A DNA stretch of 64,000 nucleotides from Octopus bimaculoides (lineage: Eukaryota), in NCBI RefSeq assembly GCF_001194135.2, contig NC_069007.1:431336-495335 (forward strand), read 5' to 3'. The translations under genes and the position numbers were made by a program. The notes beneath the pieces were generated by a model, which saw nothing but the letters and a program-made list of their open reading frames with translations, was not told the origin of the DNA and searched no databases. Below, one piece after another: positions 1,770 through 64,000 of this stretch (positions are counted from its first letter, which is position 1; every line of letters begins with the position of its first letter).

Positions 1770-2624
1770 AATTCTGAATATATTAACATGTATACATTAT
1801 TGAACTTCATAAATCTGCAGTATTCGTCTCCAGAAAACTTTTCTTACATGGGCACAGCGCTAAAAAGAACGTAAGTGTATCGGTAGCAGACGAAAATCGT
1901 CCGAATTATATATCACGAGAGTGAGTGAGAGAGAGAGAGCGTGGTTGAGAGAGCGAGAGAAGGTGGGTGAGAGGGTAAAGACATAGATGATTTTCTTGAT
2001 AGCAATAGTAGAGATAGAAAAATAATTGAATGTTATTGTGAATGTAGCTGTGAATATAGGTACACCGATACTTATAGAGAGAGACTCACAGACAGACATA
2101 GTTATAACTTGAGAATTCGGTGCTCACAAATACGGTCCGTAAAATAATTATTAGGAGATGTATTGATATAAATTTCAGCCAACAACCATTAAACCTACAA
2201 AACCTAAGTTAAAGACATTATTTGTTCTGATGAAAATTACTTTCACCGTAGTGTTTCTTGATACAAAACACTCTCAAAGTTATTACCCGTATAAAAAAAG
2301 AATATATTACAGAACAATATTAATATTTGGCGGCGAAATATTATGTTAGAATCCGCTCTATACTTTAAATGTTCGTTCTAATGTTGCCAGGAAATTCTTA
2401 AAAGGTCATAAATAGTAACTTTAACGCAAGACGTAAATATGAGACATTTAATAAGAATTGCTCCAACGCGCATTGCACTCGTACAATAAATGTAGTATAG
2501 AAAACACTTTGTAGTGCTCAATTGACTTGAATGCAAACTAGGCCCACAGAGTAAAGAAAAGCTATCATAGAAATCTAGGCGAGTTGATATGGAGCAAGTT
2601 TGGTGAAGCGCATTATTCCACTGT

Positions 2625-2758
2625 TACTTATTTAATCGACCCCGAAAGAGTAAACGGCAAAGTCGACCTCAGCGGTGTTTGAACTCGGAAAGTAAAGACG
2701 GACGAAGAGCTGGTAAATACTTTGCTTGGCGATGCTAACGATTCTACCAGCTCGCCGC
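2625..2758 (-). mobile_element. SINE family A copy
   Basis: ATCGACCCCGAAAG...GGCAAAGTCGACCTCAGCGG...GAACTC...GCTAACGATTCTACCAGCTCGCC matches the family A pattern. Confidence 0.8.
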
Positions 2759-5944: not shown

Positions 5945-6100
5945 TAAAATTTTGGCACAAGGCCAACAAATCGATTACATCGACCCCAGTGCTCAACTGG
6001 TACTTATTTTATCGACCCCAAGAGGATGAAAGGCAAAGCTGACCACTGCAGAATTTGAAATCAGAGACGGACGAAATGCTGCAATTCATTTTACCCGAAG
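5945..6100 (-). mobile_element. SINE family A copy
   Basis: TTTTGGCACAAGGCC...CGATTACATCGACCCCAGTGCTCAACTGGTACTTATTTTATCGACCCC... Confidence 0.8.
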
Positions 6101-14945: not shown

Positions 14946-16254
14946 CAACAGCAAATTCTGATGTTTCCTCATCAAAACACCATCGTTTTTCCCCTAATTA
15001 ATCAAACATCGACTTCCATCGTAATTGTATTTCAACTGGAGGTTGTAATTAGTGGAGCCAACAACAACAACAACATCATCAATAATCACAAGGACAGCAA
15101 CAATATTTCAAGAGAAAAAAATAAATAAACAAAAACAGAAGATAAACAGCAACAAATGTTCTCAGAAATATCTTCTTTTTTTTTTTTTAAATTGCATTTG
15201 CGAGAGAAATTATTCTTAGCAACGTATAACGAACAGCGGCACCGCACCGCCGCCACAATAAGCCCCCTTGTGCCTCCACTTCAACTCATCTTCGCAACCA
15301 ATACCATTACCGCTAACCAACCTTATAACAATATATGTACTCTATTACAATCATCATTAAACGTCACCATCATTACTATAATAGCAACAACAACAACAAC
15401 AACAGCTATGATAATTTCTTTTTTTTTATTTTATTTAATTTTATAATGATTCCAGAGAAATGGTTCGGCGGAAGCGTTGAAACGAAGAACAAATGCTTGG
15501 CGTAATTGTGTTCTGCGTTCTGAACGGTTTGCGTTCTAAGTTCACATCCTGTTGTAATCGATTTTACCTTTCGCCCTTCAGGAATCAATGAAATAAAGTA
15601 CCAGTCACATGCTACGGTCAATTCTTTTCTCTCTCTCTCCCCCTCTATCACTCTCAGCATAATGTGATCCTTGTCTCATTATTACCACGCCTGAAACCCG
15701 AGCAAGAGAAGGAAGTTGAGCTAAAGAGACAGGGACCACGTCTCCTGAAACCTACGACAACCGTCCAAAGAGACCCGGGGTAAAGTCATGGTAGCTGAGA
15801 GGCAGACCTACCAGACGCAGACAGAGGAGTGAGTGGCATAACACGGACTAGATTAGGGGCTGAAGATTTCAATAACCGACTTTTAGGTCGAACCAAAGAA
15901 TCTGTTTCCTTTACTAATGATATTTGTTACTTACATCGCCATTCAGATCTTCTATCGTGGGTTTTGAGCACCGAACACAAAGAACAGGGTGAGATGGTGC
16001 AAACCTCTGAGAATTAGCCAATCCACTGTCTTCAACTGCTACATTGTTTATCGGTCTCAAAATGCTGAATAGTGTCGTTGAAATTGATGCAATTTGAACC
16101 CGGTGTGTAGAGAAGCAGAGCAAATACCACAACACAATCTGTTAGGCTCTCAAAAAACTGTCAGTTCTGTGCCTTTATTAGAACTAATTTTAAGGATGCG
16201 ATCCAGCAGAATCGTCAACACACCGCAGAAAATGCTTAACAATATTTCGTCTAT

Positions 16255-16410
16255 ATTTACGTCCTGTGTTCAAATTCCAGCGCGGTCGACTTTGCTTTTC
16301 ATTACTTCAGGACCTATGAATGAGTTCGAGTCAACCACTAGGGTCGATGTAATCGATTAGAGTCCTCCCTCAAAATTTCAAGCCTAGTATCTGTATTAGA
16401 AAGGATTATT
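16255..16410 (+). mobile_element. SINE family A copy
   Basis: GTGTTCAAATTCCAGCGCGGTCGACTTTGC...GGGTCGATGTAATCGA...CAAAATTTCAAGCC. Confidence 0.75.
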
Positions 16411-16567: not shown

Positions 16568-17960
16568 GTGACCTTTCCCTCCGCCAACTCTACTGCAATG
16601 GTGTCACCAGATTTTGGCGCAAAGCATGTCTATGTGGTTTTAACGGTACCAAGGAAAAGTGTCTCCAACGAGAGCTGGAGAGTGATTAGAACATTCTTAG
16701 TAAAATATAGTCGACAAAATCAATGTGGCAGGCCATTTAAAAAGTTGGGCGCTCCGTCTTATATCGACCCCATCCAGATTACATTATTTCATACATAACC
16801 CAATTGAGACATACGCAAGCCGTTACGGCCCCACCGTTCTTGATTGTTTTTATCTTTTTTTAATGACAGATGTAAACCTGATGCGATCAATATAAGTCAT
16901 AACTCACAACTGTTTAGTTCAGAAGACTCCATCTGTTGCCAGTTCCCAGCCTGGATTTCGATAGAAGAATAACACACTCCATTCATCACACATAAATACT
17001 ATGCAAGCCTCCCTTTAAACCACCACCACCACCACCACCGCCGCCGCCGCCGCCACCACCACCTCTAGCAGTCGATTGACCTGCTGGAAATAACAGCAAT
17101 ACTTTCGAGAGACACACTTGATAAACCACAAGCATAGATCTGGCAAATTTTTCTTGTCTTTTCTTTTACCATTTTTCAGATGAACCACAAGAAAATCAAC
17201 TGTTTACATATTTCCCTCAGCGCATCATAGCAAGTGACGTTCCTAGTTTTATAATCTATGCTAAATGTAAAGATTACTCACTCTATTAGTGTTCTATGGC
17301 ATTATTGTTGGTTCAGCGAGAAAGGAAGGCAACTGATTTCTTCATTCCTTATTAGGTTGAACAAGTATTGTTAGCTGAAAGTGTAGTCATTAAGAAAGAT
17401 GATCTACAGAGAGATATCAAATTGTTACAGAAAGTATTCTGGAGGTAATCGTTCCGAGTTCAAATCGTATCGTTGTAAACTTAATTCGTCGACCCATAAG
17501 TCTCAGTCAAGTAATAAGGCAGATTTCCGGTTATTCTATTTTTTTCTAATCTCTCATTATCGCAGAATCGGTTACCGTGCATTCTGAGGCAGACTTGGGG
17601 ACAGCTAACATTGTCCCTCGCTTCCAAGAAATGAAAAGATGATGGGCGAAAGGCCAGCAGTAATCACTTCTCGTTTAGCATGTTTCAAAGAAACACTCAC
17701 AAGAAATCGGAAATGGCGCATGCAAATGGACATGTTTTCTGAACGGGGCCTAGTGAATAATTGTTCATCGCATTTTATAGTTCGGAACGATTTAATTGTT
17801 CTGTCTTGGTGTCAAACAATATAGAAAAAGAGCTCTGCTTTTAAAACTGCAGCAACAAGCTCAATCTACAGAGGGTTCGTAAAAAACTGTCACCGGGAAA
17901 AAGAGATTCATTGGATCCTTATTGAAAAAAACAGGAGGTGCTGTTCGAATGTTTAAATAA

Positions 17961-18170
17961 TGGTTTCAAATTTTTTAACAAAGCAAGCAATTTCGGGGGA
18001 GGGATTAAGTCGATTACATCGACTCCAGTGCTCAACTGGCACTTATTTTATCGACCCCGAAAGAAATGAAGGGCAAAGTCGACCTCGGCGGAATTTGAAC
18101 TTAGAACGTAAAGGCGACGAAAGGCCGCTAAGCATTTCACCCGGCGAGCTAATAATTCTGCCAGCTCGCT
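17961..18170 (-). mobile_element. tRNA-derived SINE, family A (well-preserved copy)
   Basis: Minus strand has head GCGAGCTGGCAGAATT (A box) ... TAAGTTCAAATTCC (B box) and body GCCGAGGTCGACTTTGCCCTTCATTTCTTTCGGGGTCGAT. About 20 related copies or fragments occur in the window. Confidence 0.85.
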
Positions 18171-20282
18171 ACTTCATTTGTTTAAAATGATACGAAGGTG
18201 GTTTGTTTAGCATCATTGGTATGAACATCAAGACTAAACACATTAACATTCAAGGATTGTAATTAACATGTAACCAGTTAGTAATTCGGAAAAAAATATC
18301 ATCGAATGGCCGTGGATGAAATAGTTGGTTTAAGTAACAAACATCATAAGTTGGCCCAGTATATATGGTGACGTGGGTTCGTAATCAAGAGATATCGCGT
18401 TCGATTTCTGCACTCAGTATCTTGGCCATGTTTTTTTTCTTTTATCGCAGCCTCAAATTAAGTCAAGCCTTATAACTAAGGGTGAATTGTACCTGCATTT
18501 TAAAAGTTCAACTTTGTCACATGTGTCGTGCTGAAGATTATACTAAAGGATACTCTCATTTCTATGGAATATGCAGCCACTGATGAGTTAATTCAAGGAA
18601 TTCTTTGATCAAACAACTGAACACTGAATGCAGACTTTGGCAGATATTGATTCTTTCAAGATATCCTTGTTCACTGGTTTCTGGCCTTGTTACAACGAAT
18701 TTTCTCTGAAGAATTATCATTAATATTATCAAATGGACAATTTAGTTTTAAAACGGGGTCAAAATGGGAGGGTAATCGACAGTGTAAAAATAATCTGACC
18801 ATAAATTTAAATGATAAAAAATAAGGGTGGATTTGATTATTTGTGATATGTTTTAAGCAGTCGAAGTAGCTCTGGAAGGGTTTTATGATTTGATTCGGGC
18901 AAAATGGGTTTGGAATATCGACTGGATCGCCATCACGTTTATCTTCGATAATAACAACAACAAAGACAGGAAAATTATGTTTTGAAAATGGTAAAAAAGA
19001 CAAGATGGCCACAGTTGGCGCGTCTTTCTACACAGATCTATCGACCAGGAACTGAGCAGGGCTTAAACGGTAGCAATGCCAGCTATAACAGCTAAAACAA
19101 AAACCACTGCAGCAAAACTTCAAAGCTAACACGACAACTATTACCGCACTGCCCCTGCCACCACCACCACCACCACCATCGACACCAACAACTGCAGCAG
19201 CAGCAGCAGAAGAGACAACAATAGGAAAGTTTAATCACTTTAAGACAATTAAATAAATTTTAATTTCATTCTCCATAATTAATAACTCCTTCCTCTCCCT
19301 AGATTTTCTTTCATCTTTCACTTGGAATCTCTGCTCGTGTGTGTGTGTATGTGTGTATGGTGTGTGTGTATGGTGTGTGTGTATGTGTGTATGGTGTGTG
19401 TGTGTGTGTATGTGTGTGCTGGAATGCGATTGTGTGGTGCTGGTGCTGAGTGTGTTTGTGAGCGATTGGGAGAGAGAGAGAGAGACAGAGAGAAAGAAAG
19501 GAAGGGAGAAATGGAGACGGAGAATAGGGCAGAAGAGGACAAAGAGAGAAAGAGAGAGAGAGAGAGAGTGGGAGAGTAGATCGAGTTCTTGATTGGTATT
19601 TTATTTCATCGATCCCAGAAGGATGAAAGGTAAAGTTGACATCGGGGCTATTTGAACTCAGAACCTAAAGGGACGGAATAAAATGCCGACTTTGTCAGTT
19701 TAGTGTTCTTACTGTCTCCTCATAATGATTTCTAGATTTGACGCAAGACCGTTTCCTTAAGCAATAAACTTCACGCATTTGTGTGCGAGGCTCAGCACCT
19801 TTCTTGTCTTTATGGAAATAAAAGAAGCAAAATATGGCGAAAATGTTCGTTTTTGCACTCCATGTTAAAACTGACACTGAACTAACAGATTTAAACAAAA
19901 TTACGCGCAATTCGCTTCTAAAGTAAGTTTAAAGTAACGGCTACCAAATGTGAAAGAGAAAAAATATCATAACATTGACAAAAGTCATTCAAAAATATTG
20001 TAACTATTTGCAAAAAACGAAATTACTTTCTTGCTAAGCCAATATACCACAGACTCCAGAAAAATAAATTGCTGAATCAACCTCAGAAAAATTTGAACTC
20101 GGAATCTCCGGCTAAGAGCCACCACGGGTCATTTTAACAGCCACTCTAACAATTTGGCAACTGCGCCTCATTTCTGTATAGAAGTAATATTGATTGAATC
20201 AAGATTTATGGGGGAAAGTAGAGAGAGACAATGGAATTTATCACATTCATATATATGTACGAATGTACCAACGTATGTATGG

Positions 20283-20818: not shown

Positions 20819-21083
20819 CATTTTGGAGAGGGTGCAAATCCATTAGATCGATCCCCAGTACGCAACTGGTACTTAATTTATCGACCCTGAAGGGATCAAA
20901 GACAAAGTCGACCTCGGCGAAATTTGAACACAGAGCATAAAGACAGAGTTCAAATTCCGCCGAGGTAGACTTTGTCTTTTATCCTTTCGAGGTCTATAAA
21001 TTCATTACCAATGGAACACCGGGGTCGATCTAATCGACTGGTCCCCTCCCGCAAAATTTCGGGTCTTGTGCTTAGAGTAGAAA
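20819..21083. mobile_element. Two family A SINE bodies fused head-to-head as a near-palindrome
   Basis: A minus copy at 20819-20931 and a plus copy at 20946-21083 are both cut at the B box, with a 14-nt spacer between them. Confidence 0.85.
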
Positions 21084-22085: not shown

Positions 22086-22381
22086 GCCCCGCTTTCCCGG
22101 GAATTACCAGGTACGTCAGCTAGTATCTATCTATCTATCTATCTTATCTATCTATCTGCATAGATATGTATATATAAAATTAGTTATATAAAATAGAAGC
22201 CTAAATATATACATGCATACCTACATATCTACACACAGATACATACATACATACATACATTCGTACGTGTGTACATATATACGTATGCTTCGAAAGTGCT
22301 TCGAAACCTCCAGCTTCTATATCGAAATTGTAAATTCCTAGTTCATCCACAACTTGCACTCAGGAATGCTCTCATGATTGT

Positions 22382-22446
22382 ACTCACGGCTGCACTCACA
22401 ACTCCACTCATGGCTGCACTCACAACTCCACTCATGGCTGCACTTA
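22382..22446. repeat. 24-bp tandem repeat, 2.7 copies
   Basis: Unit ACTCATGGCTGCACTCACAACTCC (first copy has C instead of T at position 6). Confidence 0.9.
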
Positions 22447-22559
22447 CGACGGAATGGATTGAAGTTGAATTCAAGATTAGCACAGGAGATTGGAACTTTC
22501 AGTTTCGTCTCTTCTACAGCTGTTGTTTTTGCTATTATTGTCCTTGTTTTTAAAGTGAA

Positions 22560-22815
22560 GACCTGTGGTCTAATGACTAGAGTGTTACACTCACGATCGC
22601 AGGATCGGGGTTTCAATTCTGGGACTGGTCGCCGTGTTGTGTTCTTGAGCAAAAGACTTAATTTTCACTTTGCTCTTGTTGACTCAACTATAAACGAGTA
22701 ACACTATGACGTGTTGACATCACATTGAAAGGGAAGGTTGTGATTTCGGTCCCATACACGACATGGAAATCAGGTAACAGGCCCTATGAGTTCTGGAACT
22801 CGAGACTGTAATATC
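22560..22815 (+). mobile_element. SINE, same family as 7400-7640, opposite strand
   Basis: GTGGTCTAATGACTAGAG...GGGTTTCAATTCTGGG...GTGTTCTTGAGCAAAAGAC...CAGGCCCTATGAG. Confidence 0.65.
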
Positions 22816-26562: not shown

Positions 26563-27289
26563 TACACAGAACTTTCTGACACTGATTAGGAAACAATTAC
26601 TGTCGATCTGAACAACCTCAACAGCAACTGGTCAGAGCTGGTAAGAATTTGAACTGCGAAAATGAAACGAAATAATTAAATGCCTCAAGGAATATTGCCA
26701 AGGGAGATTTTCTAGGAATAATGATTTCTTACATAATTACACGGTTTTTGATCAGACTGACCTCAATAACTGACAGGAAATTATTGTCATAATCGGCTCA
26801 CTGATATTTGCATGTAAAATTTCAAGGTTGACATTACAGAATTATGTCCATCATTCTACCGATTCTGCCTGTCTTAATATTTGGCGCTGATCAGATTTGA
26901 ACCCAGGACGTAGTGGGATACAAAGAAATGACGGGTGGTATGTAATGCAACGACCTGCATTTCATTCTCTGGTTTGGAAAAGTGGAATTGTTAAAATGTC
27001 GAAGAGAGTCGTGGTGATGCTGGATTAAAAAAGAGCCTTCAAGCGTCGGAAACATACCTTGTAGTATTTATTCCGACAAAATATAATGCAGCGTTTGCAC
27101 TATTCTGAATTCAAATCACGCCGGGATCAAATCTGTGCTTCGTTCTTCACCGCGGACAGATAAAATAAAACTCTGTTCGAAAGCTGAACTTGATTAAATC
27201 GACTTCTATTTAATATATAGACTGGTGCCTGAGTAAGTACCCTTATTTGAAGCCAAGTTAAACCACTTATCAATCTTTCCATCTCTACA

Positions 27290-27600
27290 CATTTTTCTTG
27301 AGAAGGACGTGGAAGTAAGAGTCCTTGGGTACCTCTATAGGGTCGCCAGAACCAACAGTTATACTTCCCAGCTGGATTCTCAAGTGTAACCTACTGGGAC
27401 CATGTATATTATCCAACCATCTCATTCTTGATCTAGCCGTAGGTCTCCTGCAAGAAAATCTTGCAAGATAGAAGAATCCGTGATGTGATATTTTTTTCTG
27501 CGTCATTCTAATCCCATGACCGCGGTGACTCCCTGATCTCCGAGCTACGACCCTTTCGATTAGTGTTACTCCACAGATCCTTCTGATGACTTCCACTTCA
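27290..27600 (-). mobile_element. Decayed RTE-like LINE 3' fragment
   Basis: Peptides VIRRICGVTLIERV and RRPTARSRMRWLDNI resemble the RTE C-terminal motifs (LRRICGVT.. and GKRPRGRPR.RW.D.I). Confidence 0.6.
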
Positions 27601-28009
27601 GCTACTGGTGTTTGCGATCAAAGTCTTTCGCTTTTTACTCAACTAATTATTAATTTGAAAATTTTAATATGATAAATATCAATTAAAGTGTTTACAACAT
27701 TGATTCTCATCTCCATCTTAACATTTACAACGAAACCAAACATTTAAAATCATAATTCTGTATAGCACATATACAGAGGCACACACAGAGATTCATAATA
27801 CATTCATATAGACAATAACACTGCACACACGCAGACATGTTTTAACCATCCTATAGAGTGACCTTTGTGTAATGATTGCTGATGGACAGATATCTTCCTA
27901 ATGAATGACAAATTAATTAGATAAGCAGGTATTTAATATCAACATGTGAAGCATTCAGACAACAAACCCGTTTCCGATAGCTATCGTATATGTTTTCATT
28001 TAAGTCTCT

Positions 28010-28492: not shown

Positions 28493-28700
28493 AGGCTGCG
28501 AGCTGGCAGAATTGTTAGCACGCCGAGCAAAATGCTTAGCAGCATTTCGTCAGTCTTAACACTGAGTTCAAATTCCGCCCGGTTCGACATTGTCATTTAT
28601 CTTTTCGGGATCGATAAAACAAGTACGAACTGAGGATTGTGGTCGATATAATCAATTTACCCCTCCCCCGATATTGATGGTCCTGTGTTAAAATTTGAAA
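28493..28700 (+). mobile_element. SINE family A, full-length copy
   Basis: GGCTGCGAGCTGGCAGAATTGTTAGCACGCCGAGC...GAGTTCAAATTCCGCC...GATGGTCCTGTGTTAAAATTTGAAAC. Confidence 0.85.
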
Positions 28701-29473
28701 CTTTTATTACAAGGTAGCGAATCGACTGGATTTTTTCCAGTTCTCTCTATGTTATGATTTCAAATCTCACGGAAGCCAACTTTGTTTTTTGGCCTTTCAG
28801 GGTCGATAAAAATCAAAATATCAGTCAGCTACTGGTGTCGATCTACTCAACAATCCCCACGTCCTCAAAATTACTGACCTTGTGCTAAAAAGCAGATACC
28901 ATCACCAACACCACCACCACCACTACCACTACCACTACCACTACTACTACTACTACTACTACAGCTTGATCTAGTTGGGGGATGGTGGTGACGTTCGTGC
29001 AGGTGGCCTTCGTAGCTGTTACGCCCCGAATCTTAATCACCGTCCCTGAACGCTTCAAGAGATATCTTTCCCGGGCAAACATGCAGCAAAACTGGATACC
29101 AAGTTTTCGTTTTCGTTCATGCGACTCGCCGAGGTTACTAAGATAAATAAATGTATAAAATTACGTTTTAAATCTAAGCAAAAACCGAATGTTTTTATGT
29201 TCCTGATAATAAACGATCTTGATTAAACATCCAAACAACATTTCTCATAATCTCTCAACCCCACTTAATTATCATAGCAACATGACATCATATGTCTTTC
29301 TCTCTCTTTCGCTAATTGTTTCTATCGATATTACAGAATTACGATTCAAATGGTTGACAACTAACATCCTTTGGTGTGTGAAAGTGTTAGGGAGATATCT
29401 AAAAACACAACACATCACAGGTACTCCAGTCATTACAGTTACAATGGTTACAAACTGGTTTCTCCTTACCTTT

Positions 29474-29513
<40 letters not shown>

Positions 29514-29609
29514 GGAAGCGCAAATTCAACTTTTCAGTATCGAATTGTTGTCGAGTATAATTCCTTTTACAGAAAGAATAAAAATCTTCCTCTTTCTTCC
29601 GCATTCTGC

Positions 29610-29818
29610 TTTCAAATTTTGGCACAAGGCTAGCAATATCAGGGATCGGAGGGGTCGATGTCATCGACCCTACTAGTCAAATGGTACTTATTTTATCGCC
29701 TCCAAAAGGATGAAAGGCTAGGTAGACTTCGTCGTAATTAGAACTCAGAGCGTAAAGACGGACGCAATGCAAAACACAACAAAGAATTTTGCCCGGTGCG
29801 CAAACGATTCTGCCAGCT
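29610..29818 (-). mobile_element. SINE family A, full-length copy
   Basis: TTTCAAATTTTGGCACAAGGC...GAACTCAGAGCGTAAAGACGGACG...AACGATTCTGCCAGCT. Confidence 0.85.
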
Positions 29819-30346
29819 TACCTCTCTCTCTCTCTCTCTCTCTCTCTTAGAATGTTGTGTAAATTCAAAACTGGAATTGTTTGTAGCTACAAAAGTTGAT
29901 GTGTATAGAAACAGAATGTTTACTCGTTTGCCTGGGGTTTGTCAAGTGATGTCGACACCCCTAATGAAACCCAATCAATGTTGAAAATTGATTAAGACTA
30001 TTCAACTCCTTTTTCAGTCTACAAAGAAACAAATAATATTGACACATCTGTACATCTACTACGTAGGCGTGCTCATTACATACACGCACACACACACACA
30101 CACACACAAACACGCACACACGCACGCACACATTTATACACATGTATACAACCACTCGTATATATATACAAACATCTTATATATTAAATTTAGACAGCAG
30201 ACATTTGTGTGTGTCTGTATGTACGTGTATATCAATAAAGTGTTGTAACGTTTATATATATATATATATATATATATGAATAAATATATGTGTATACATA
30301 CATACATACATATATGTATACATACATATATATACATACATATATC

Positions 30347-30377
<31 letters not shown>

Positions 30378-30424
30378 CTATATACATACACATATATATA
30401 TATGGGAGAATATACAAATAATAA

Positions 30425-32133: not shown

Positions 32134-33452
32134 GTGTGTGTGCGTGGTTTTACGTACACGACTAAAAGATAGGGGCTGTTAATATTTTCTCTCATTCTTT
32201 ACGCGGGTCTTGGCAGGATTCTATAATACGCCTTCTCTTTCCAGGCAATCTTCAGGCTCTGAATTCATACAAATTTTGTATATTGAATAAACCGTGTTCT
32301 CAGATAAAGTGACATGTATATTATAGCCAAGGAGAATGTACCTACAACCATTAATGCACGGTGTCCTAGACACAATGTCGAAGATCGGTTCTTCAGAATC
32401 ATGGTTAAATATTATTTGCTGTGGATATAAAATTTAGCGATAATTCATATCCATATCATGTTTGACGTGTTGAAACGGTAGCATTAACATATCGAAAACC
32501 CAACGAAAGAAAACAAATGAGATCCTCGTTTGTGTTGACCGATCAAGGACAACGATGGATCAAAAAGAGAAAAGAAAGAATAAATTTCAGAAATTTTAAT
32601 AGTTTCTCTCTTAAAGGTACTTTGCAGTGAAGTTCTTTAAAGTTTAGTGCGGTTGGGATAGCCTCATACTAGTCGCCATTCAGACAAGAAAATGGTGGAG
32701 CAGGTTTTTAGTTTTACCCACTTGAAATCTTTTGTCTGACACTATATAGCTGTCAGCCATAGAACGCATCACAGTCATCGGCAGATATTTACTACCGAAT
32801 CTCACGGTCACATATCCATTCTCGGTCCCGCACATGCTGTTACGGACACATGATGAAAACACATATTCCATTAGCATTTTGTGACAAAACCTACTTAACT
32901 TGAAAAAATAATTAATTAAAAGGAAAAAAACAAAAGGTCATTAAAAATTAAGTTAGTAAGATCCAGACCTCTGTCCTATGTGAATAGTACTGACTACGTC
33001 CTTAGAAAAGCTCTGTCAATTTAAGTACGTTTGTGTTGTATTAAATGAATCTACTTCGCCACTACTCCTGCCACATCTCCCCCCGACCCCCCCCCCAAGC
33101 TTTCAGTCAAAGTATGACAGCTTTTATCCTTCACTCGCCTCAGGACTCTGGGTGTGTCTCGGCAGGTGATTGTATCAGACATGCATATTAAAAGTAAATG
33201 ACAACAACAACAACAACAACAACAACAATAGGGAAGCACCTGCCCAATCGGAGTTTGTGATGTGACATCTTATGGAGACACAGGCTTTGGCGGACCTCTA
33301 GATTGAGAGTTCGCTTCCATGCATTATATAAATATAGACTATGATTTCCTTTAGAATTTATGCAACATAAATATATACATATCATGATTCTATATATATA
33401 TATATTATACATAATATATAAATTATATATTACATATATATTTGTATGTATA

Positions 33453-33506
<54 letters not shown>

Positions 33507-33545
33507 TATATATATACAGATATATATGTGCACACACACACACAA

Positions 33546-33581
<36 letters not shown>

Positions 33582-34404
33582 CTGTATGTATGTATGTAAG
33601 TTTATATTATATTATCAACAATATTCATCATATCAGTCAAATTTATTTTATAATTAAATAAAGAAATTTAATTATTCAAAAACTTATGGAAGGTTTATCT
33701 CATTTCGAACACATAAATTATGAATGTTTACTTGTCATAGTAAATGTTTAGATGTGAGCATATGGTGGAACGCACCACACACAAAAAGAAACAAAAAGGA
33801 AACAAAATATGCCAGTATATATATGCGCGCGTGTGTGTGTGTGTATACTCACACAGAAATAAAACACAGTAGTTTAATGTTTTAATGAAATTACTGCTTC
33901 TAAATAAATCATTGGTTTATCAGCATCGGAGTTCGCTCGGCTAGTTTCATTTCTTCTAATAGACATCAAGAAGAGCTCAACTTAACTCTTAATTTCGCAA
34001 CTCAGAAATTATATATGTCTTTACAATGCCATAAGTAAATAGCTTAACAGTGGCTCGAAACTGCCGAACAGCGAAGTTACTGGGGTGAAGACACAACATC
34101 ACTGTTTGTCAAGTGCTGGTGGTAGACAAACCCTGACGCAGACAGGCACATTCAGATGTCTATATATTGAATCATTCCATAAATAATGCAGTTTTTTTTA
34201 TATTTCCATTATTTTTTTAAAATTTCATATACACAAATTCTTTTTTACTCTAAAATATACTCTCCTTCATTTTCTACAATGCTCTTCCATCTATCTGGTA
34301 GTCCTGCCAGGCCCCTCTTCTAAAATTCAATTGTTCGTGACTAAAAATACCCTCCAATTCTCTTGTAACCTCGTCTACAGAATTCATATTTTTTCCATCC
34401 AAAT

Positions 34405-34545: not shown

Positions 34546-35039
34546 CTAGTCATACACCTACACTTACTTAAACACACACACACGTATACACACGTATATA
34601 TACACACGTATATACATCTTTCTCTTTCTATCTATCTACCTCTCTACATATATACATATCTGACCATATACATGTGTATATACATATACTTCTGCTGTAA
34701 TATTCAGCTTTCGATGGTGTCTAGCAGTGTCAGCCCAAGCTGGAATCCTTATATTTCTTAGACCTCAGTTTGAAATTAATAGTCGTTGCGAGATAATGAA
34801 ATTTCCCCTAACCATTATAAAAATTGTTAATCTACAAATGTTTCAGTCATTCAGAAGCAGCAGCGATCTTCTGTGTTTACTGTTAATAATTTTTTACAGC
34901 AACCGTGTAAAGAAAAACCCGGAGTAACGGACGACGAATGAGTTATCTTCAAGTAAATGAATAACGTAACTCCTTTAAATTACGCTGTCTTCAGGCAATG
35001 CCAAGAAATTTCATGTGAGACGCACTTCTTCAGATACAC

Positions 35040-35091
<52 letters not shown>

Positions 35092-35140
35092 CAACTATAA
35101 CATATGCAAGGAATAATCGAAGATTCTGAAAACAACTTAC

Positions 35141-35272
35141 GTATCTTTTATATTGAAATGTTAAGAGAAGGCCACACAAGCATAAAGAGTATTTAAATGG
35201 AAAGTCAGTGTGTATATTCAAGAAACTCACCTGAAAAAGAAATAAGAATAAAAAAACATAAATCGGTTAGTG
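35141..35272 (-). other. Recursive splice site (ratchet point) with cryptic 90-nt RS-exon
   Basis: Minus strand: CACTAAC (35272-35266), then CGATTTATGTTTTTTTATTCTTATTTCTTTTT, then CAG|GTGAGT (junction 35231/35230). A second donor TAC|GTAAGT is at 35141/35140. Orientation matches the 62895 donor. Confidence 0.6.
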
Positions 35273-35884
35273 TCTAATAACATATTTAGTCAAATCATAA
35301 AATTAAAACTGAAATAACATGTCGAATTATGCAGAAAAGAGGGCAAAATTAATGTTTGTTCAGTAAATTGACAACAGGAGATCGGTTTCGGTTAAATTAG
35401 TCCTCTTCAGAAAAAGGAAAACTTAAGTAGTATTTTTGACTCTGGACCACTCGGTGGTTGGCAGATTTTTGAAAAGATTTTTGAGACTTATCTGTAAATC
35501 TTCGCTATCAATTCGTTCTCATTAATCGCTAAGTACCAATGTCAGCTGCCAATTAAGCCAACACGAAAACGCTAGATTTCTTTTCCTGGTGTAAATAATG
35601 ATGTCGATGTTTTAGAAGAATCAATATCGTATCGGCTCGAAATGAGTTTTGCAGTCTTTGCAGCCTCTTCTTACGATTCTGTGTTCGTGTCCTTATGAGG
35701 TTGACTTGAACTTTTATCGATCTCTGATCGATAAGTCAAACATATATATTGCCGTGGATCTAATTGATTGCACAACTCCACGAAATCATTGACAATGTGA
35801 CGTTCTGATAATGGTGTTTATGACAATGGTTATTATTATTATTGCTACTGCAACCACCACCACCACCACTACTACTACTACTGT

Positions 35885-42138: not shown

Positions 42139-42359
42139 AGCGATAGGGCCGTTGTGTTCCTTACTGGTGGACGTACAGATGAGATGAGGAGTCAAGAAAC
42201 TGGGGGAGAGAGAGAGAGATAGATAGAGAGAGAGAGAGAGAGAGAGTGAAAGACAATGAAAGAAAGAAAAAAGGAGAGGGGGAAAAGAAAGCGCGCGTGC
42301 AAGAGAGAGAGGGCAGATATACGAAGACACACACACACGTACATACACATACATATTGG

Positions 42360-42557
42360 CATCAAATTTTGGCACAAAGCCAGCAACTTCAGGGGTGGGG
42401 GTGCCATGGTAAGTCGGTTACATTGATCCCAGTATTCAACTGGTACTTATTTTGTCGACCGTGAAATGATTAAAGGTAAATCGACTTCGGAGAAATTTGA
42501 ACTCAGAACTTAAGGACGAACAAAATGCCGCGGTAACGGACCTTACAGCTCGCCGCT
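42360..42557 (-). mobile_element. SINE family A copy
   Basis: CAAATTTTGGCACAAAGCCAGC...AAATTTGAACTCAGAAC...CAGCTCGCCGC. Confidence 0.8.
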
Positions 42558-44488: not shown

Positions 44489-45229
44489 CACGATTTGAAT
44501 GAAAATTAGAATATGCGCAGATATGAAATTTGCTCATCGCTACTTCTCCGTAGCCAGACCAATCCATTTCTCGACCGTATTGCAACTTGCGATGAAAAGT
44601 AGATTCTGTACAATGATAAAAAACGTTCTACACAGTGGACCGAAATGAAGCACCGAAAACCTTCTTTAAACCCGAGTTCTTCTAAAAGAAGGTTACATTG
44701 ATTGTTTGGAGGTGTACTGTTGGACGCATCCGTTATAATTTCTTAAAACTCGGAAAAACTGTAACTGCAGAAAAAAATATTGTCGTGAAATTGCCAAAAT
44801 GAACGAAAAAATGCTACTCCTCTGTCCCAGACTCATCAACAGAAGAGGGCCAATCATTCTTCATGACAATGCTCAACTACACGTTTCACCAATGACGTTC
44901 TAGAAGTTGAAGGAACTTGGTTACGAAGTTCTTCCCCACCCAGCTTATTCCTCAGACCTTTCTCCTACCGACTACTACTTTTTCAACCACCTTGATGGTT
45001 TCCTGAGAGAGAAAAAAAAATCAAAAAATCAAACTGATGCTGAAAGAGCTCATCAGCTCCAGAACTCCAGATTTTTATGTTACCAGATTAAACAAACTTG
45101 TAACTCGTTGGCTAAAGTGTGCTGATTGTAATTGTACTTACTTTGATGAATAAAATTTCCGCATTGTTGAAATATATTGTGATGAATTTCATGTTTCAAA
45201 ACCTTGCTTACTTTTTACTCAGCCTGATA
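44489..45229 (+). mobile_element. 5'-truncated, decayed mariner (DD34D) transposase with 3' TIR
   Basis: Translates as HDLNEN*NMRRYEICSSLLLRSQTNPFLDRIATCDEK*ILY...IILHDNAQLHVSPMTF*KLKELGYEVLPHPAYSSDLSPTDYYFFNHLDGFL. There are 34 residues between the HD aspartate and the SPTD aspartate. It ends in ...CTTACTTTTTACTCAGCCTGA followed by TA (45228-45229). Stops and frameshifts are present. Confidence 0.92.
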
Positions 45230-48672: not shown

Positions 48673-49548
48673 TACAAGATGCGGTAGATAAACTGTCATC
48701 TAAATTCGGCAAAATGAAAGTAACACTGACATCTCATTTTAAGAGATATATTTACCAAAGTTACACTAAAATATCTTGAAATACTAAAGAGTAAATTAAT
48801 TCAGTAGAATCGCCATTGGCTTCAGCCACAACCTCCAGACGACTTCGGAATCTCCTGCAACTCTTCTGACGGTTTCCTTGTTTAAGTTGGTGTATGCTGC
48901 CACGATCCTTGTCTTCAGTACACCTTTGGTTTTACAAGGAGTTTTGTTGGTCTCTCCTCTCAACTGCACCCCACACATAACAATCAAGGGGGTTGCAGTT
49001 TGGGGAGTTAGGTGGCCAGATGTCAGGGGTGATGTGGTCGCAGAAATTGTCTGACAGTCATGACTGGGTTCTCCTGCTTGTGTGGCAGGGTGCAGAGTCC
49101 TGTTGCCAGACATAGGGTCTTCCAGCAGCCACCGTCTTGACCCAGGGCAGCACAAACTCCTCCAGGCACTAGATGTAGGCCTCCATGTTGAATGTGAGGC
49201 TGTGTGGGAAGATGAATGGAGGCATAACGTTGCCATCACTAGTGATCGTTCCAAACACCATGATGTTGACTGGATGTTTGATTTTTATCACACTCAGTAT
49301 GTGTCCTCTGAACGACGCCCAAACGCTCTGAAATGTTCGTCTTGGAGCTTCTGGCGCGAATACCGAGCAGTACAACATATCAGTCACTAATTTCTGGCAG
49401 AGTGAATTGCGTCATGATGATGTGTTTCTCACAGACGAAGCCCAGCTGACCCGACTATAATGTGTAATCGACAAAATCAAAAACAAACAACGCGCACGCG
49501 TGAAATTAAAATTATACAATGCCGACGATTTACCCATCGCACGCTGTA
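48673..49548 (-). mobile_element. Internally deleted Tc1/mariner element of the DD37D (maT/mori) class, with both TIRs and TA target duplication
   Basis: Minus translation: KHPVNIMVFGTITSDGNVMPPFIF...PYVWQQDSAPCHTSRRTQS*LSDNFCDHITPDIWPPNSPNCNPLDCYVWGAVE, with 37 residues between the QQD and NPLD aspartates. The ends TA-CAAGATGCGGTAGATAAACTGTC and GACGATTTACCCATCGCACGCTG-TA are imperfect inverted repeats (17/25 matches). The N-terminal half of the transposase is missing. Confidence 0.88.
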
Positions 49549-58184: not shown

Positions 58185-58335
58185 AGCCATCTCGTTGGTT
58201 CTGAGTTCAAATTCTGCCGAAGCCGACTTCGGCTTTCATGCTTTCGGCGTCAATAAAATAAGTATTGATCAAGAACTGGGATCGATGTAATCGACTTACC
58301 ATGGCCTTCTACCTATTAGTAGAGAAGATTATTAA
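58185..58335 (+). mobile_element. SINE family A copy
   Basis: TTCTGAGTTCAAATTCTGCCGAAGCCGACTTCGGCTTTCATGC...GGGATCGATGTAATCGACTTACC. Confidence 0.75.
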
Positions 58336-60039: not shown

Positions 60040-60214
60040 TCGAGGGGCCAATCGATGAGATCAATGCTAGTGCGTAACTGGTACTTATTCTATCGAACCC
60101 GAGAGGATGAAAGGCAAAGTCGACCTTGGCGGAATTTGAACTCAGAACGTAGACAGATGGAATACCGCTAAGCATTTCGGCCAGCGTGCTAACGTTTCTG
60201 CCAGCTCGGTGCCT
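60040..60214 (-). mobile_element. SINE family A copy
   Basis: AACTGGTACTTATTCTATCG...GGCAAAGTCGACCTTGGCGGAATTTGAACTCAGAACG...GCTAACGTTTCTGCCAGCTCG. Confidence 0.85.
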
Positions 60215-61583: not shown

Positions 61584-62036
61584 CATGGCGGTTGTCTACT
61601 CCTTATGCAGAGTTTGACCACCTCCTGTACCTACACCTTAGAACCATCATGGCATCTGATGTTGCTTTTTAAACCAGACAATGTTCTGAAAAGACACCCA
61701 CATAGATTGCATCTCCGATTTGGACAACCAAAACCTACAGATAAGTTCTGCTCTTTGTGGATCTTAAAATGTTTTTTGAGGCCTCCGTTGGATTTGCAAA
61801 CCTTCTGGCATACACTGCATTGAAAGGTGTGCACAGACATATAGGCAGCATAGTTGGTAGAGGTTCGTTTTTCATGCATTCACAGATAAGATTTGAGACC
61901 AGCAAAAGACAGGTATGGTCTGTCACAGACTGTGCACACAAAAGGTCATTGTCATTCACCTCGATCGTTACATTCTTCCTTAGATCTCTTTTGAGACTTG
62001 TGTTATCCTGGCCTCTTCAAATGCTTTCACTCCACT
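61584..62036 (-). mobile_element. 3' remnant of an RTE-like LINE with three tandem C2H2 zinc fingers
   Basis: Across frameshifts it reads GVKAFEEARIT...KRDLRK...LCAQ(C)DRPYLSFAGLKSYL*MH; FQCSVCQKVCKSNGGLKKHFKIH; RCNLCGCLFRTLSGLKSNIRCH. It ends in a short 3' UTR followed by an (AT)n tail. Clade assignment is from motif resemblance. Confidence 0.7.
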
Positions 62037-62715
62037 CCACATACATACATACAGGCAGACAGATATCTGCACGACCTAAAGCCTTAAAGAATGATGAACA
62101 AGACAACATGCCTTCCTTCACAGCTTTGCTACGAAGTAGGTTGTCGGTCAAAGCTTAGACTAAATTGAAAACACAAAGAGATAAACATACACAAACGCAC
62201 ATATACATGAAGGATGCATAATACGGGCATAAACACATACACACAAGCACAATGTGCGTGTGTGCGTGAATGAACGTATACGCATATATATATGTGTATA
62301 TATAATAAATAATAAGGGCGGATTGTTAGCAATGTTTCAACCGAAAGACAACGATATATACGTCACTAAAGCAAGCGAGGGCGCTATTCGGCACCAGTAT
62401 TGCAAGAAATAAGAGTCAAAACGACTCATAGCCACAATAACGCTGCGTCTTATTTACGGACACGGAAGGGAAAGTCCTTAAGTAACGGATCAGTGATTAC
62501 ACGATTAGATTAACACTCGTCAGTGGGTCTCATCTTGGATTAAACTCCACTCGCCTTCCCAGCTTGAGGCGCTGGTGGGAGCCACTGACAAGCGTCAATG
62601 TAAACGCGAGGTCACTGGTGATCTGGCTATGACCGGTGCTTAGGAAGCTTGTTCCCCTTGTCACTAAATGAGACGGTGCGTCATTCTGGCTTTGAATTGT
62701 TTTGTATTTACAAAC

Positions 62716-62717
62716 GC

Positions 62718-62764
<47 letters not shown>

Positions 62765-62781
62765 TGTGTGTGTGTGTGTGT
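62716..62781. repeat. (GCGT)n followed by (GT)n microsatellite
   Basis: Directly visible; lies in the first ~200 nt of the inferred first intron. Confidence 0.95.
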
Positions 62782-62894
62782 TCCTAGGTCCTCCCCTGTA
62801 TCTTTTTCAACAGATGTGTTCAACCTGAAATGTCTAGACCCATGGTACTTCCACCCACCGTTCACATGCACAATTTTAGGACGTGACCACTTAC

Positions 62895-63100
62895 CTCCTC
62901 GAATCCAGTGCTTTAGATCGGACAGGAGATTAACCACAGTAGAGAGACATTCCCATGGACTCTGCAGCTGAGGGTCCTGAAACCACACATCCACATCGGT
63001 AAATCCGACTGCGACCTTAACGCAGCACCTTAGACCGCTTGACCACTCTATAATCCACACAACATCTCACCGGACCGCCTTTCTTGCGACCGCATGGCAA
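62895..63100 (-). other. Putative non-coding first exon (5' UTR) of a minus-strand gene; ends at a consensus splice donor
   Basis: Minus strand reads ...CGAGGAG|GTAAGTGG at 62895/62894, a perfect donor. The sequence is unique, GC/CpG-elevated and directly downstream of promoter-like motifs. Every ATG in it closes at a stop before the donor; the only frame open across the donor has no ATG. The 5' end is estimated. Confidence 0.55.
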
Positions 63101-63809: not shown

Positions 63810-64000
63810 TGACAGTCCTGGTTTAGGACGAATGTTGCTGTAATCTAGCCCCAGGAGACATCGTCTCCAGCTGGCTATTCGACACGATCTGTGTCCTTAA
63901 ATTTTCGAACAAGGGAATCTAGCACCTCCACTCAGCTCAAAACAATATCTGTGTATCGCGATTTCTAGGTTATGTCGTATAACCAGCTGGAGACGATGTC
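63810..64000. mobile_element. Foldback/MITE-like element with inverted repeats, cut off by the window end
   Basis: GACATCGTCTCCAGCTGG (63857-63874) is the exact reverse complement of CCAGCTGGAGACGATGTC (63983-64000); the match extends inward imperfectly for another 16 nt (11/16). Confidence 0.6.

What the first reader, a model, noticed from the sequence alone, without database searches (positions are those of the whole stretch)
35141..35272. Candidate recursive splice site with cryptic RS-exon inside a giant intron
Seen: on the minus strand a perfect branch point CACTAAC (branch A at 35267, 36 nt from the junction) is followed by an AG-free T-rich tract and CAG|GTGAGT, so a strong 3' splice site regenerates a strong 5' splice site with zero spacing. 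A second donor (TAC|GTAAGT) lies exactly 90 nt downstream. It is the only such site I found on either strand of 64 kb, and it shares orientation with the first-exon donor 27.7 kb upstream. Established: this architecture (YAG|GT plus a downstream cryptic donor for exon definition) defines Drosophila ratchet points and vertebrate RS-exons in long introns. Inference: this gene removes its very long first intron stepwise. I know of no description of recursive splicing in cephalopods or molluscs, but cannot check the literature. Alternatives: an ordinary 90-nt exon that happens to begin with GTGAGT (open only in phase 0: VSFLNIHTDFPFKYSLCLCGLLLTFQYKRY), or a 78-nt UTR exon 35231-35308 using the weaker upstream CAG.
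Basis: partly seen in the sequence, partly recalled or inferred. Interest (0 to 1): 0.85.

Follow-up and report, generated by a model that had tools for sequence, protein, structure and literature searches.

The report
Candidate recursive splice site, context unproven
A strong splice acceptor joined directly to a strong splice donor lies on the minus strand of a repeat-rich, apparently gene-free, octopus-like region and looks like the 'ratchet points' that remove long introns in steps, but nothing here shows the strand is transcribed, and the supposed upstream first exon is a fragment of a dead retrotransposon.

Summary
The sequence is exactly as described. On the minus strand, CACTAAC (A at 35267) is followed by a 26/32-pyrimidine, AG-free tract, then CAG|GTGAGT (35231|35230) and TAC|GTAAGT 90 nt later. 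The 9-mer alone is at chance level (1 found, 1.42 expected). The joining of a top-0.13% acceptor to the best donor in the window is unusual: about 0.3% of simulated windows, or up to 5% under a looser null. The perfect branch point adds a further factor of about 1.6%. The site is unique sequence, shows no RNA structure, and its 30-aa peptide matches nothing among 5.8 billion proteins. It meets every sequence-level criterion of a ratchet point with a cryptic RS-exon, including a regenerated donor stronger than the downstream donor.

The context claim fails. The 'first-exon donor' at 62895 lies inside a decayed Ty3/gypsy integrase ORF, where GGT-AAG encodes Gly-Lys. No exon or gene was found on either strand of the 64 kb. 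Transcription, junction use and conservation could not be tested.

My estimates: real recursive site about 0.35, ordinary non-coding exon about 0.28, chance about 0.30. If real, it is a new member of a known kind, of modest interest.

The parts
35266..35272 (-). Candidate branch point CACTAAC (branch A at 35267, 36 nt from the junction)
   Evidence: Read. It lies inside the 40-nt AG-free zone. CTAAC at 18-45 nt upstream occurs at only 1.6% of AGs in the window.
35234..35265 (-). Polypyrimidine tract, T-rich and AG-free (26 of 32 pyrimidines; T at -5 and -6)
   Evidence: The acceptor PWM score is 10.9 bits, rank 8 of 6217 AGs. TT at -5/-6 is found in 99.5% of fly ratchet points.
35231..35233 (-). 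3' splice site CAG; the junction is 35231|35230
   Evidence: This is the only YAGGTRAGT on either strand.
35225..35230 (-). GTGAGT: a 5' splice site regenerated at zero distance from the acceptor (the ratchet-point donor)
   Evidence: It is the best donor score of 7573 GTs in the window (13.1 bits as CAG|GTGAGT; 12.2 bits if preceded by GAG).
35141..35230 (-). 90-nt candidate RS-exon. It has 31% G+C, is open only in frame 1, and holds a short ATG...TAA uORF.
   Evidence: No protein among 5.8 billion shares three 5-mers with its peptide. It has no repeat copy in the window and no RNA structure (z = +0.8).
35135..35140 (-). Downstream donor TAC|GTAAGT, which would define the RS-exon
   Evidence: Its PWM score is 5.6 bits, rank about 330 of 7573. 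It is weaker than the regenerated donor and is not statistically special.

Best explanation
The element is a real spliceosome target on the minus strand: an RS-type exon deep in a long intron whose upstream exon lies outside what I could identify, possibly outside the window.

The proposed steps, all inferred, are these.
1. U2AF and U2 recognise the CACTAAC branch point, the T-rich tract and the CAG.
2. U1 binding at the GTAAGT 90 nt downstream helps define the 90-nt exon.
3. The upstream exon is joined to 35230, which removes the first intron segment as a lariat.
4. The junction recreates a strong donor (xAG|GTGAGT).
5. This donor outcompetes the weaker TAC|GTAAGT, so in the next step the 90 nt leave with the rest of the intron and never appear in mRNA.

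Only the sequence anatomy and its statistical rarity are shown here. Transcription and use of the site are not.
For: - The juxtaposed acceptor and donor stand out: 24.0 bits against 14.3 for the next of 282 AGGT sites. The acceptor ranks 8th of 6217 and the donor 1st of 7573.
- Such a site arises in about 0.3% of Markov-simulated windows.
- A perfect CTAAC at -36, inside the AG-free zone, has a background of 1.6%.
- TT at -5/-6 matches 196 of 197 fly ratchet points.
- A short downstream exon with its own donor fits the RS-exon model.
- The regenerated donor (12.2-13.1 bits) is much stronger than the RS-exon donor (5.6 bits). In fly mutagenesis this pattern predicts skipping.
- The exon has intron-like composition (31% G+C) and no protein match.
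- The sequence is unique and is not part of any repeat family seen in the window.
- The minus strand is T>A by 3.3% in 13 of 16 masked 4-kb bins, a weak hint that the minus strand is the sense strand.
Against: - There is no evidence that the minus strand is transcribed.
- No other exon was found.
- A looser null gives 0.048 such summed scores per window, which is about 2000 per 2.7-Gb genome before the branch point is counted.
- The PWM was written from memory and is not cephalopod-specific.
- The downstream donor is unremarkable.
- The exon is 90 nt long with one open frame, whereas fly cryptic RS-exons are about 50 nt and usually out of frame.
- GC skew is near zero.
- Most transposons in the window are sense on the minus strand: 9 of 13 SINEs plus the gypsy, LINE-tail and one mariner remnant. 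By analogy with mammals, this mildly disfavours minus-strand transcription.
- Conservation could not be tested.
- Recursive splicing has never been shown in a mollusc.
Confidence: 0.35

Rival explanations
1. It is an ordinary expressed non-coding exon, either a 5'-UTR exon or a cassette exon of an mRNA or lncRNA, spanning 35230-35141. It happens to begin with GTGAGT. The 90 nt are included in at least some mature transcripts, and the recursive donor is incidental or only partly used, as for 'expressed RS-exons'.
For: - The branch point, tract, AG and a GTAAGT 90 nt later are what any real internal exon has.
- The length is a multiple of three with one open frame.
- Mammals may hold thousands of expressed exons with a recursive donor but only a few fully skipped ones.
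- The statistical rarity of the acceptor half supports a real exon as much as it supports a ratchet point.
Against: - An exon would begin with GTRAGT by chance only about once in a thousand cases (my estimate).
- The regenerated donor is far stronger than the exon's own donor, which predicts skipping.
- G+C is 31%, and inclusion would add a uORF.
- The peptide is absent from 5.8 billion proteins.
- No partner exons were found in 64 kb.
Confidence: 0.28
2. It is a chance juxtaposition in untranscribed or antisense DNA. A T-rich low-complexity tract, possibly the antisense tail of an old retroposon, happens to abut CAGGTGAGT and has no function.
For: - The 9-mer is at chance frequency.
- The genome is AT-rich and full of low-complexity tracts.
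- The recombination null gives 0.048 per window.
- There is no gene, exon or transcript evidence in the window.
- The supposed first exon is a transposon fragment.
- The features were chosen after the site was seen.
- The strand indicators conflict.
Against: - Both halves being this strong occurs in about 0.3% of windows.
- A perfect CTAAC at the right distance adds a factor of about 1.6%.
- Together these give about 1-15 chance sites per 2.7-Gb genome, fewer than the real sites expected if cephalopods resemble flies or vertebrates.
- The site is not in any repeat family seen in the window.
Confidence: 0.3
3. GTGAGT is a plain donor. It ends either the 78-nt exon 35308-35231, which uses the upstream CAG, or an unannotated alternative first exon.
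For: It is the best donor score in the window. A CAG lies at 35311-35309.
Against: That acceptor scores -4.3 bits, rank 1368 of 6217. The 'exon' would consist largely of a pyrimidine tract and a branch-point consensus. A lone strong donor is expected by chance. No promoter evidence was found.
Confidence: 0.04
4. It is a protein-coding cassette exon encoding VSFLNIHTDFPFKYSLCLCGLLLTFQYKRY.
For: Frame 1 is open and the length is 3n.
Against: - No protein in the 5.8-billion set shares even three 5-mers with the peptide.
- The other two frames are closed.
- G+C is 31%.
- No coding neighbours were found.
Confidence: 0.03

Closest known systems
Drosophila intronic ratchet points with cryptic RS-exons (Ubx, kuz, Bx; Hatton 1998, Burnette 2005, Duff 2015, Joseph 2018/2021, Pai 2018)
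   Same: - (Y)nCAG|GTRAGT with zero spacing.
- A prominent T-rich tract with TT at -5/-6.
- A short downstream exon with its own weaker donor.
- The regenerated donor is predicted to win, so the exon is skipped.
   Different: - The exon is 90 nt, against about 50 nt in flies.
- One frame is open, whereas fly cryptic exons are generally out of frame.
- The host intron and gene are unknown.
- There is no junction, lariat, saw-tooth or conservation evidence.
- The animal belongs to a phylum where the process has not been reported.
Vertebrate RS-exons in long (often first) introns of neuronal genes (Sibley 2015)
   Same: AG|GTRAGT plus a downstream donor used for exon definition. The exon size is normal, and inclusion would act as a poison or UTR exon.
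   Different: Position in a first intron is not established here, because the proposed exon 1 is a transposon remnant. No expression data are available.
Expressed or annotated RS-exons whose recursive donor is repressed by the exon junction complex (Blazquez 2018; abstract)
   Same: An exon that starts with a functional-looking donor. The length is a multiple of three.
   Different: Those exons are annotated, usually coding and constitutive. This one has no protein match, and its own donor is weaker than the recursive one.
Pseudoexons and decoy exons in long introns
   Same: An intronic acceptor and donor pair with exon-like spacing and intron-like composition.
   Different: Pseudoexons do not usually carry a consensus donor fused to the acceptor. 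That fusion is the distinguishing feature here.

Membership tests
Recursive splice site (ratchet point + RS-exon) | [quoted passage not shown] | tested here: met
   CAG|GTGAGT at 35231|35230. It is the top composite of 282 AGGT sites.
Recursive splice site (ratchet point + RS-exon) | Prominent polypyrimidine tract with TT at -5/-6 and a branch point upstream within the AG-free zone | tested here: met
   26 of 32 bases are pyrimidines, with T at -5 and -6, and CACTAAC at -36. The fly figure of 99.5% TT comes. Use of the branch point was not tested.
Recursive splice site (ratchet point + RS-exon) | Downstream 5' splice site that defines a short RS-exon | tested here: met
   TAC|GTAAGT lies 90 nt downstream. 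It is present but not more than chance would give.
Recursive splice site (ratchet point + RS-exon) | For a cryptic (skipped) RS-exon, the regenerated donor is stronger than the RS-exon donor | tested here: met
   12.2-13.1 bits against 5.6 bits with an approximate PWM.
Recursive splice site (ratchet point + RS-exon) | Lies on the sense strand inside a long intron of an expressed gene | tested here: inconclusive
   - The proposed exon 1 is a gypsy integrase remnant.
- No exon or gene was found.
- T>A skew mildly favours the minus strand, while transposon orientation mildly disfavours it.
Recursive splice site (ratchet point + RS-exon) | Splicing intermediates: exon-to-ratchet-point junction reads, recursive lariats and saw-tooth nascent-RNA coverage | not testable with these tools
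Recursive splice site (ratchet point + RS-exon) | The acceptor|donor motif is conserved above the flanking intron in related species | not testable with these tools
   No orthologous locus could be retrieved. The peptide and the ORFs within 2.5 kb either side gave no hits, and the exact-product look-ups were empty.
Recursive splice site (ratchet point + RS-exon) | [quoted passage not shown] | tested here: inconclusive
   The peptide is absent from the protein database, which is consistent. However, the exon is 3n long with one open frame, which is atypical.
Protein-coding cassette exon | Open frame whose translation is present in, or homologous to, known or predicted proteins | tested here: not met
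   Only one frame is open. No candidate was found in 5.8 billion proteins.
Structured small RNA (miRNA, mirtron, snoRNA) in an intron | Match to an RNA family, or a fold more stable than shuffles | tested here: not met
   Rfam gives nothing except a spurious microsatellite hit. The fold z-score is +0.8.

The most novel reading that the evidence does not exclude
This is a working ratchet point in a cephalopod, which would be the first recursive splice site in a lophotrochozoan. It would imply that stepwise removal of giant introns through cryptic RS-exons is shared by all three bilaterian superclades, and that it helps octopus process its very long, repeat-laden introns.
Probability: 0.33. Interest if true: 0.5.

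Novelty: new member of a known kind. Interest (0 to 1): 0.3.

Why it matters
Recursive splicing has been shown in flies and vertebrates and predicted in locusts. No paper in the searchable library reports it in molluscs. Cephalopod genomes have very long introns in neuronal genes, so a validated ratchet point would extend the mechanism to a third bilaterian superclade. It would also give a concrete site for RT-PCR and for a genome-wide scan of motif enrichment on sense against antisense strands.

One unvalidated site in a window with no identifiable gene is only a lead. The practical lesson is that the 'first exon' used to orient it is a transposon remnant, so host gene and strand must be established from transcript data first.

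Tried and rejected
1. Coding exon. Rejected.
2. Repeat or transposon origin of the site. A local repeat scan, blastn of 34800-35700 against the window and whole-window self-blast coverage found no other copy.
3. Structured RNA. Rfam at the gathering and E-value thresholds and an RNA fold found nothing.
4. Host gene.
   - Pfam on all minus-strand ORFs of at least 45 aa, concatenated, found nothing. Sensitivity was low, since even the C2H2 finger was missed.
   - Ten individual ORFs gave only a C2H2 finger and a weak DDE_3 match.
   - A 1155-aa pseudo-protein of the longest ORFs against 1.84 billion representatives returned only transposon families: gypsy integrase, an RT-linked zinc finger and antisense calls of the same element.
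5. Conservation and orthologous loci. ORFs within 2.5 kb either side, searched as one query, gave no hit. Exact-product look-ups for three window ORFs were empty. The ENA contig reached through a mariner homologue is not this locus. The DNA collections on offer are prokaryotic, viral or metagenomic, so I did not scan them.
6. First exon. No ATG-initiated frame ends at 62895, and CpG observed/expected there is only 0.9-1.6 against 0.88 overall. The ARAGORN tRNA-Leu call beside it is not supported by Rfam even at E<=1. The donor lies inside an integrase ORF. Rejected as evidence.
7. The 78-nt exon alternative. Its acceptor scores -4.3 bits. Rejected.
8. Strand of transcription from composition and transposon orientation. 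The hints are weak and conflicting.

I did not run the plus-strand concatenated Pfam scan, because the minus-strand run showed the method to be insensitive.

Full report
**What is there.** Read on the minus strand, the sequence is ...agaCACTAACcgatttatgtttttttattcttatttctttttCAG|GTGAGTttcttg...(90 nt)...aaaagaTAC|GTAAGTtg.
- The nearest upstream AG is at 35275-35274, so the branch point sits in a 40-nt AG-free zone.
- The tract holds 26 of 32 pyrimidines, with T at -5 and -6.
- Only frame 1 of the 90 nt is open.
- The segment has 31% G+C and contains a short ATG...TAA uORF.

**Is it more than chance?** The core YAGGTRAGT is not: one match against 1.42 expected, and the 8-mer gives 5 against 4.8. 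The combination is unusual. I scored it with an approximate metazoan splice-site PWM that I wrote from memory. It is not cephalopod-trained, and MaxEntScan was not available.
- The site scores 24.0 bits, against 14.3 for the next of 282 AGGT sites.
- The acceptor half ranks 8th of 6217, and several better ones are (CT)n microsatellites followed by AG.
- The donor half ranks 1st of 7573.
- Markov order-3 and order-5 simulations reach 24 bits in 1 of 300 windows each.
- A null that recombines the window's real upstream and downstream contexts is less favourable. It gives 0.048 expected per window for the summed score, or about 0.003 if both halves must be as strong as observed.
- This corresponds to roughly 10^2 to 2x10^3 chance sites in a 2.7-Gb genome.
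- CTAAC at the right distance occurs at 1.6% of AGs, which lowers the chance expectation to about 1-15 per genome.
- The downstream donor adds little. GTRAGT lies within 250 nt 10% of the time, and the acceptor-donor pair ranks only 5th of 27 such pairs.

**What it is not.**
- It is not a known coding exon. No protein among 5.8 billion shares three 5-mers with the peptide.
- It is not part of a repeat family visible in the window.
- It is not a structured RNA.
- The alternative 78-nt exon has a poor acceptor, at -4.3 bits.

**Context.** The window has 34% G+C, is crowded with TA and CA microsatellites, and has 13 assembly gaps totalling 3104 N. A mariner-like remnant has one named relative, from Octopus bimaculoides.

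I found no cellular gene on either strand. Concatenated minus-strand ORFs gave no Pfam hit, although the method was insensitive. ORFs around the site gave no homologue. The longest ORFs of both strands, searched against 1.84 billion representatives, returned only transposon families.

- That ORF aligns with the C-terminal domain of Ty3/gypsy integrases: 40% identity over 83 aa with P0035, which carries Integrase_H2C2, rve and Integrase_p58_C.
- Ten library hits are significant for the whole library (E from 4e-7 to 8e-4).
- The alignment crosses the supposed splice site: IRGG|KWSRPKIVHVN against IRGGRKSHPMVVHVN.
- The GT-AAG is therefore a Gly-Lys codon pair in a dead transposon.
- The neighbouring ZnF ORF (61634-61879) is the zinc-finger tail of a reverse-transcriptase protein family.
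- The local rise in G+C is transposon coding sequence rather than a promoter island. CpG observed/expected is 0.9-1.6 against 0.88 overall.
- The tRNA-Leu call beside it gets no Rfam support.

The orientation argument and the phrase 'giant first intron' therefore have no support. The site may still lie in a long intron whose exons are outside the window. Indirect strand indicators conflict. The minus strand is T>A by 3.3% in 13 of 16 masked bins, but GC skew is near zero. Most transposons (9 of 13 SINEs, the gypsy and LINE remnants and one mariner remnant) are sense on the minus strand.

**Mechanism.** Taken as a splicing unit, the element has everything the RS-exon model requires: acceptor fused to donor, a strong tract with TT at -5/-6, and a short exon bounded by a second donor. 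The donor-competition rule, established by mutagenesis of fly Bx and kuz, predicts the outcome. The regenerated donor (12.2-13.1 bits) is much stronger than TAC|GTAAGT (5.6 bits). The 90 nt should therefore be spliced in and then removed. Only the anatomy is shown here. Every step involving RNA is inferred.

**Weighing.** If cephalopods hold tens to hundreds of such sites, as flies do (more than 500) and mammals may (nine fully skipped sites, thousands of expressed RS-exons), real sites outnumber the 1-15 expected by chance. If they hold very few, chance is competitive. I put a real splice unit at about 0.65, split between a skipped recursive exon (0.35) and an expressed non-coding exon that merely starts with GTGAGT (0.28). 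I put chance at about 0.30 and other readings at about 0.07. For calibration, 57% of the conservation-filtered fly predictions were later verified (91 of 160). This site lacks the conservation filter.

**Novelty and interest.** Full-text searches found no report of recursive splicing in octopus (0 papers), cephalopods, molluscs or squid; the few co-occurrences are incidental. A locust case rests on prediction plus U2AF binding. If validated, this would be a new member of a known kind in a new phylum, which is expected rather than surprising given the conserved spliceosome. As it stands it is a good-looking but unvalidated motif in a window with no identifiable gene. I score interest at 0.3.

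Noticed in passing
The ORF reads straight through GAG|GTAAGT as ...IRGGKWSRPKIVHVN.... It shares 40% identity over 83 aa with a 549-aa integrase protein. The fragment is truncated on its upstream side by the tRNA-like sequence.
   Followed up: yes
window 62961-63053 (-): ARAGORN calls a 93-nt tRNA-Leu(AAG), but Rfam's tRNA model gives no hit even at E<=1. The D and anticodon arms look Leu-like and the T arm is degenerate. It is probably a tRNA pseudogene or a SINE head abutting the integrase fragment. There is no other copy in the window.
   Followed up: partly
window 61634-61879 (-); antisense ORF 61745-62155 (+): An 82-aa ORF with two C2H2-type fingers (one passes Pfam, 25.4 against a 25.2 cutoff). 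It aligns with the C-terminal fingers of a 748-aa reverse-transcriptase (RVT_1) protein at 37% identity over 78 aa, so it is probably the tail of a LINE-like ORF2. The overlapping plus-strand ORF also has homologues, presumably antisense ORF calls on copies of the same element.
   Followed up: partly
window 2617-2755, 2834-2912, 5968-6097, 16230-16377, 17940-18190, 19601-19678, 20825-20942, 20947-21058, 28498-28708, 29607-29818, 42350-42531, 58198-58298, 60052-60208: Thirteen copies (71-89% identity to the copy at 17940-18190) of a roughly 200-bp tRNA-derived SINE with a B-box-like GTTCAAATTCC. Nine are sense on the minus strand and four on the plus strand. In translation they produce recurring motifs such as FHPFGVDKISTS.
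   Followed up: partly
window 48796-49411 (-) and 44904-45122 (+): Frameshifted mariner/Tc1-like (DDE_3) transposase remnants. Relatives include 'uncharacterized protein LOC128250757 [Octopus bimaculoides]' and unnamed ORFs on long ENA contigs (ERZ21867824 for the one contig looked up). This is the only pointer to the organism.
   Followed up: partly
window 63857-63884 and 63973-64000: A 28-nt inverted repeat, 93% complementary, with an 88-nt spacer. It is cut by the window edge and may be a MITE or a transposon terminus.
   Followed up: no
window 62705-62790; many other places, e.g. 30250-30420, 33430-33600, 35030-35095: Dense microsatellites: (ACGC)n/(CA)n, (TA)n, and (ATT)n just downstream of the candidate RS-exon. 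They give spurious mir-297, mir-3149 and snoRNA matches in Rfam E-value mode, and long spurious YIYI/HTHT ORFs. Thirteen N gaps (3104 N) are mostly flanked by such repeats.
   Followed up: yes
window 22197-22700: Overlapping ORFs of more than 100 aa on both strands with repeated peptide units (ALTTPLMA..., SHEWSCEC...), suggesting a minisatellite rather than a gene.
   Followed up: no
window 27288-27617 (-): An ORF containing ...RRICGVTLIERV...RMRWLDNI..., which from memory resembles the C-terminal tail of LINE ORF2 proteins. Pfam gave no hit.
   Followed up: partly
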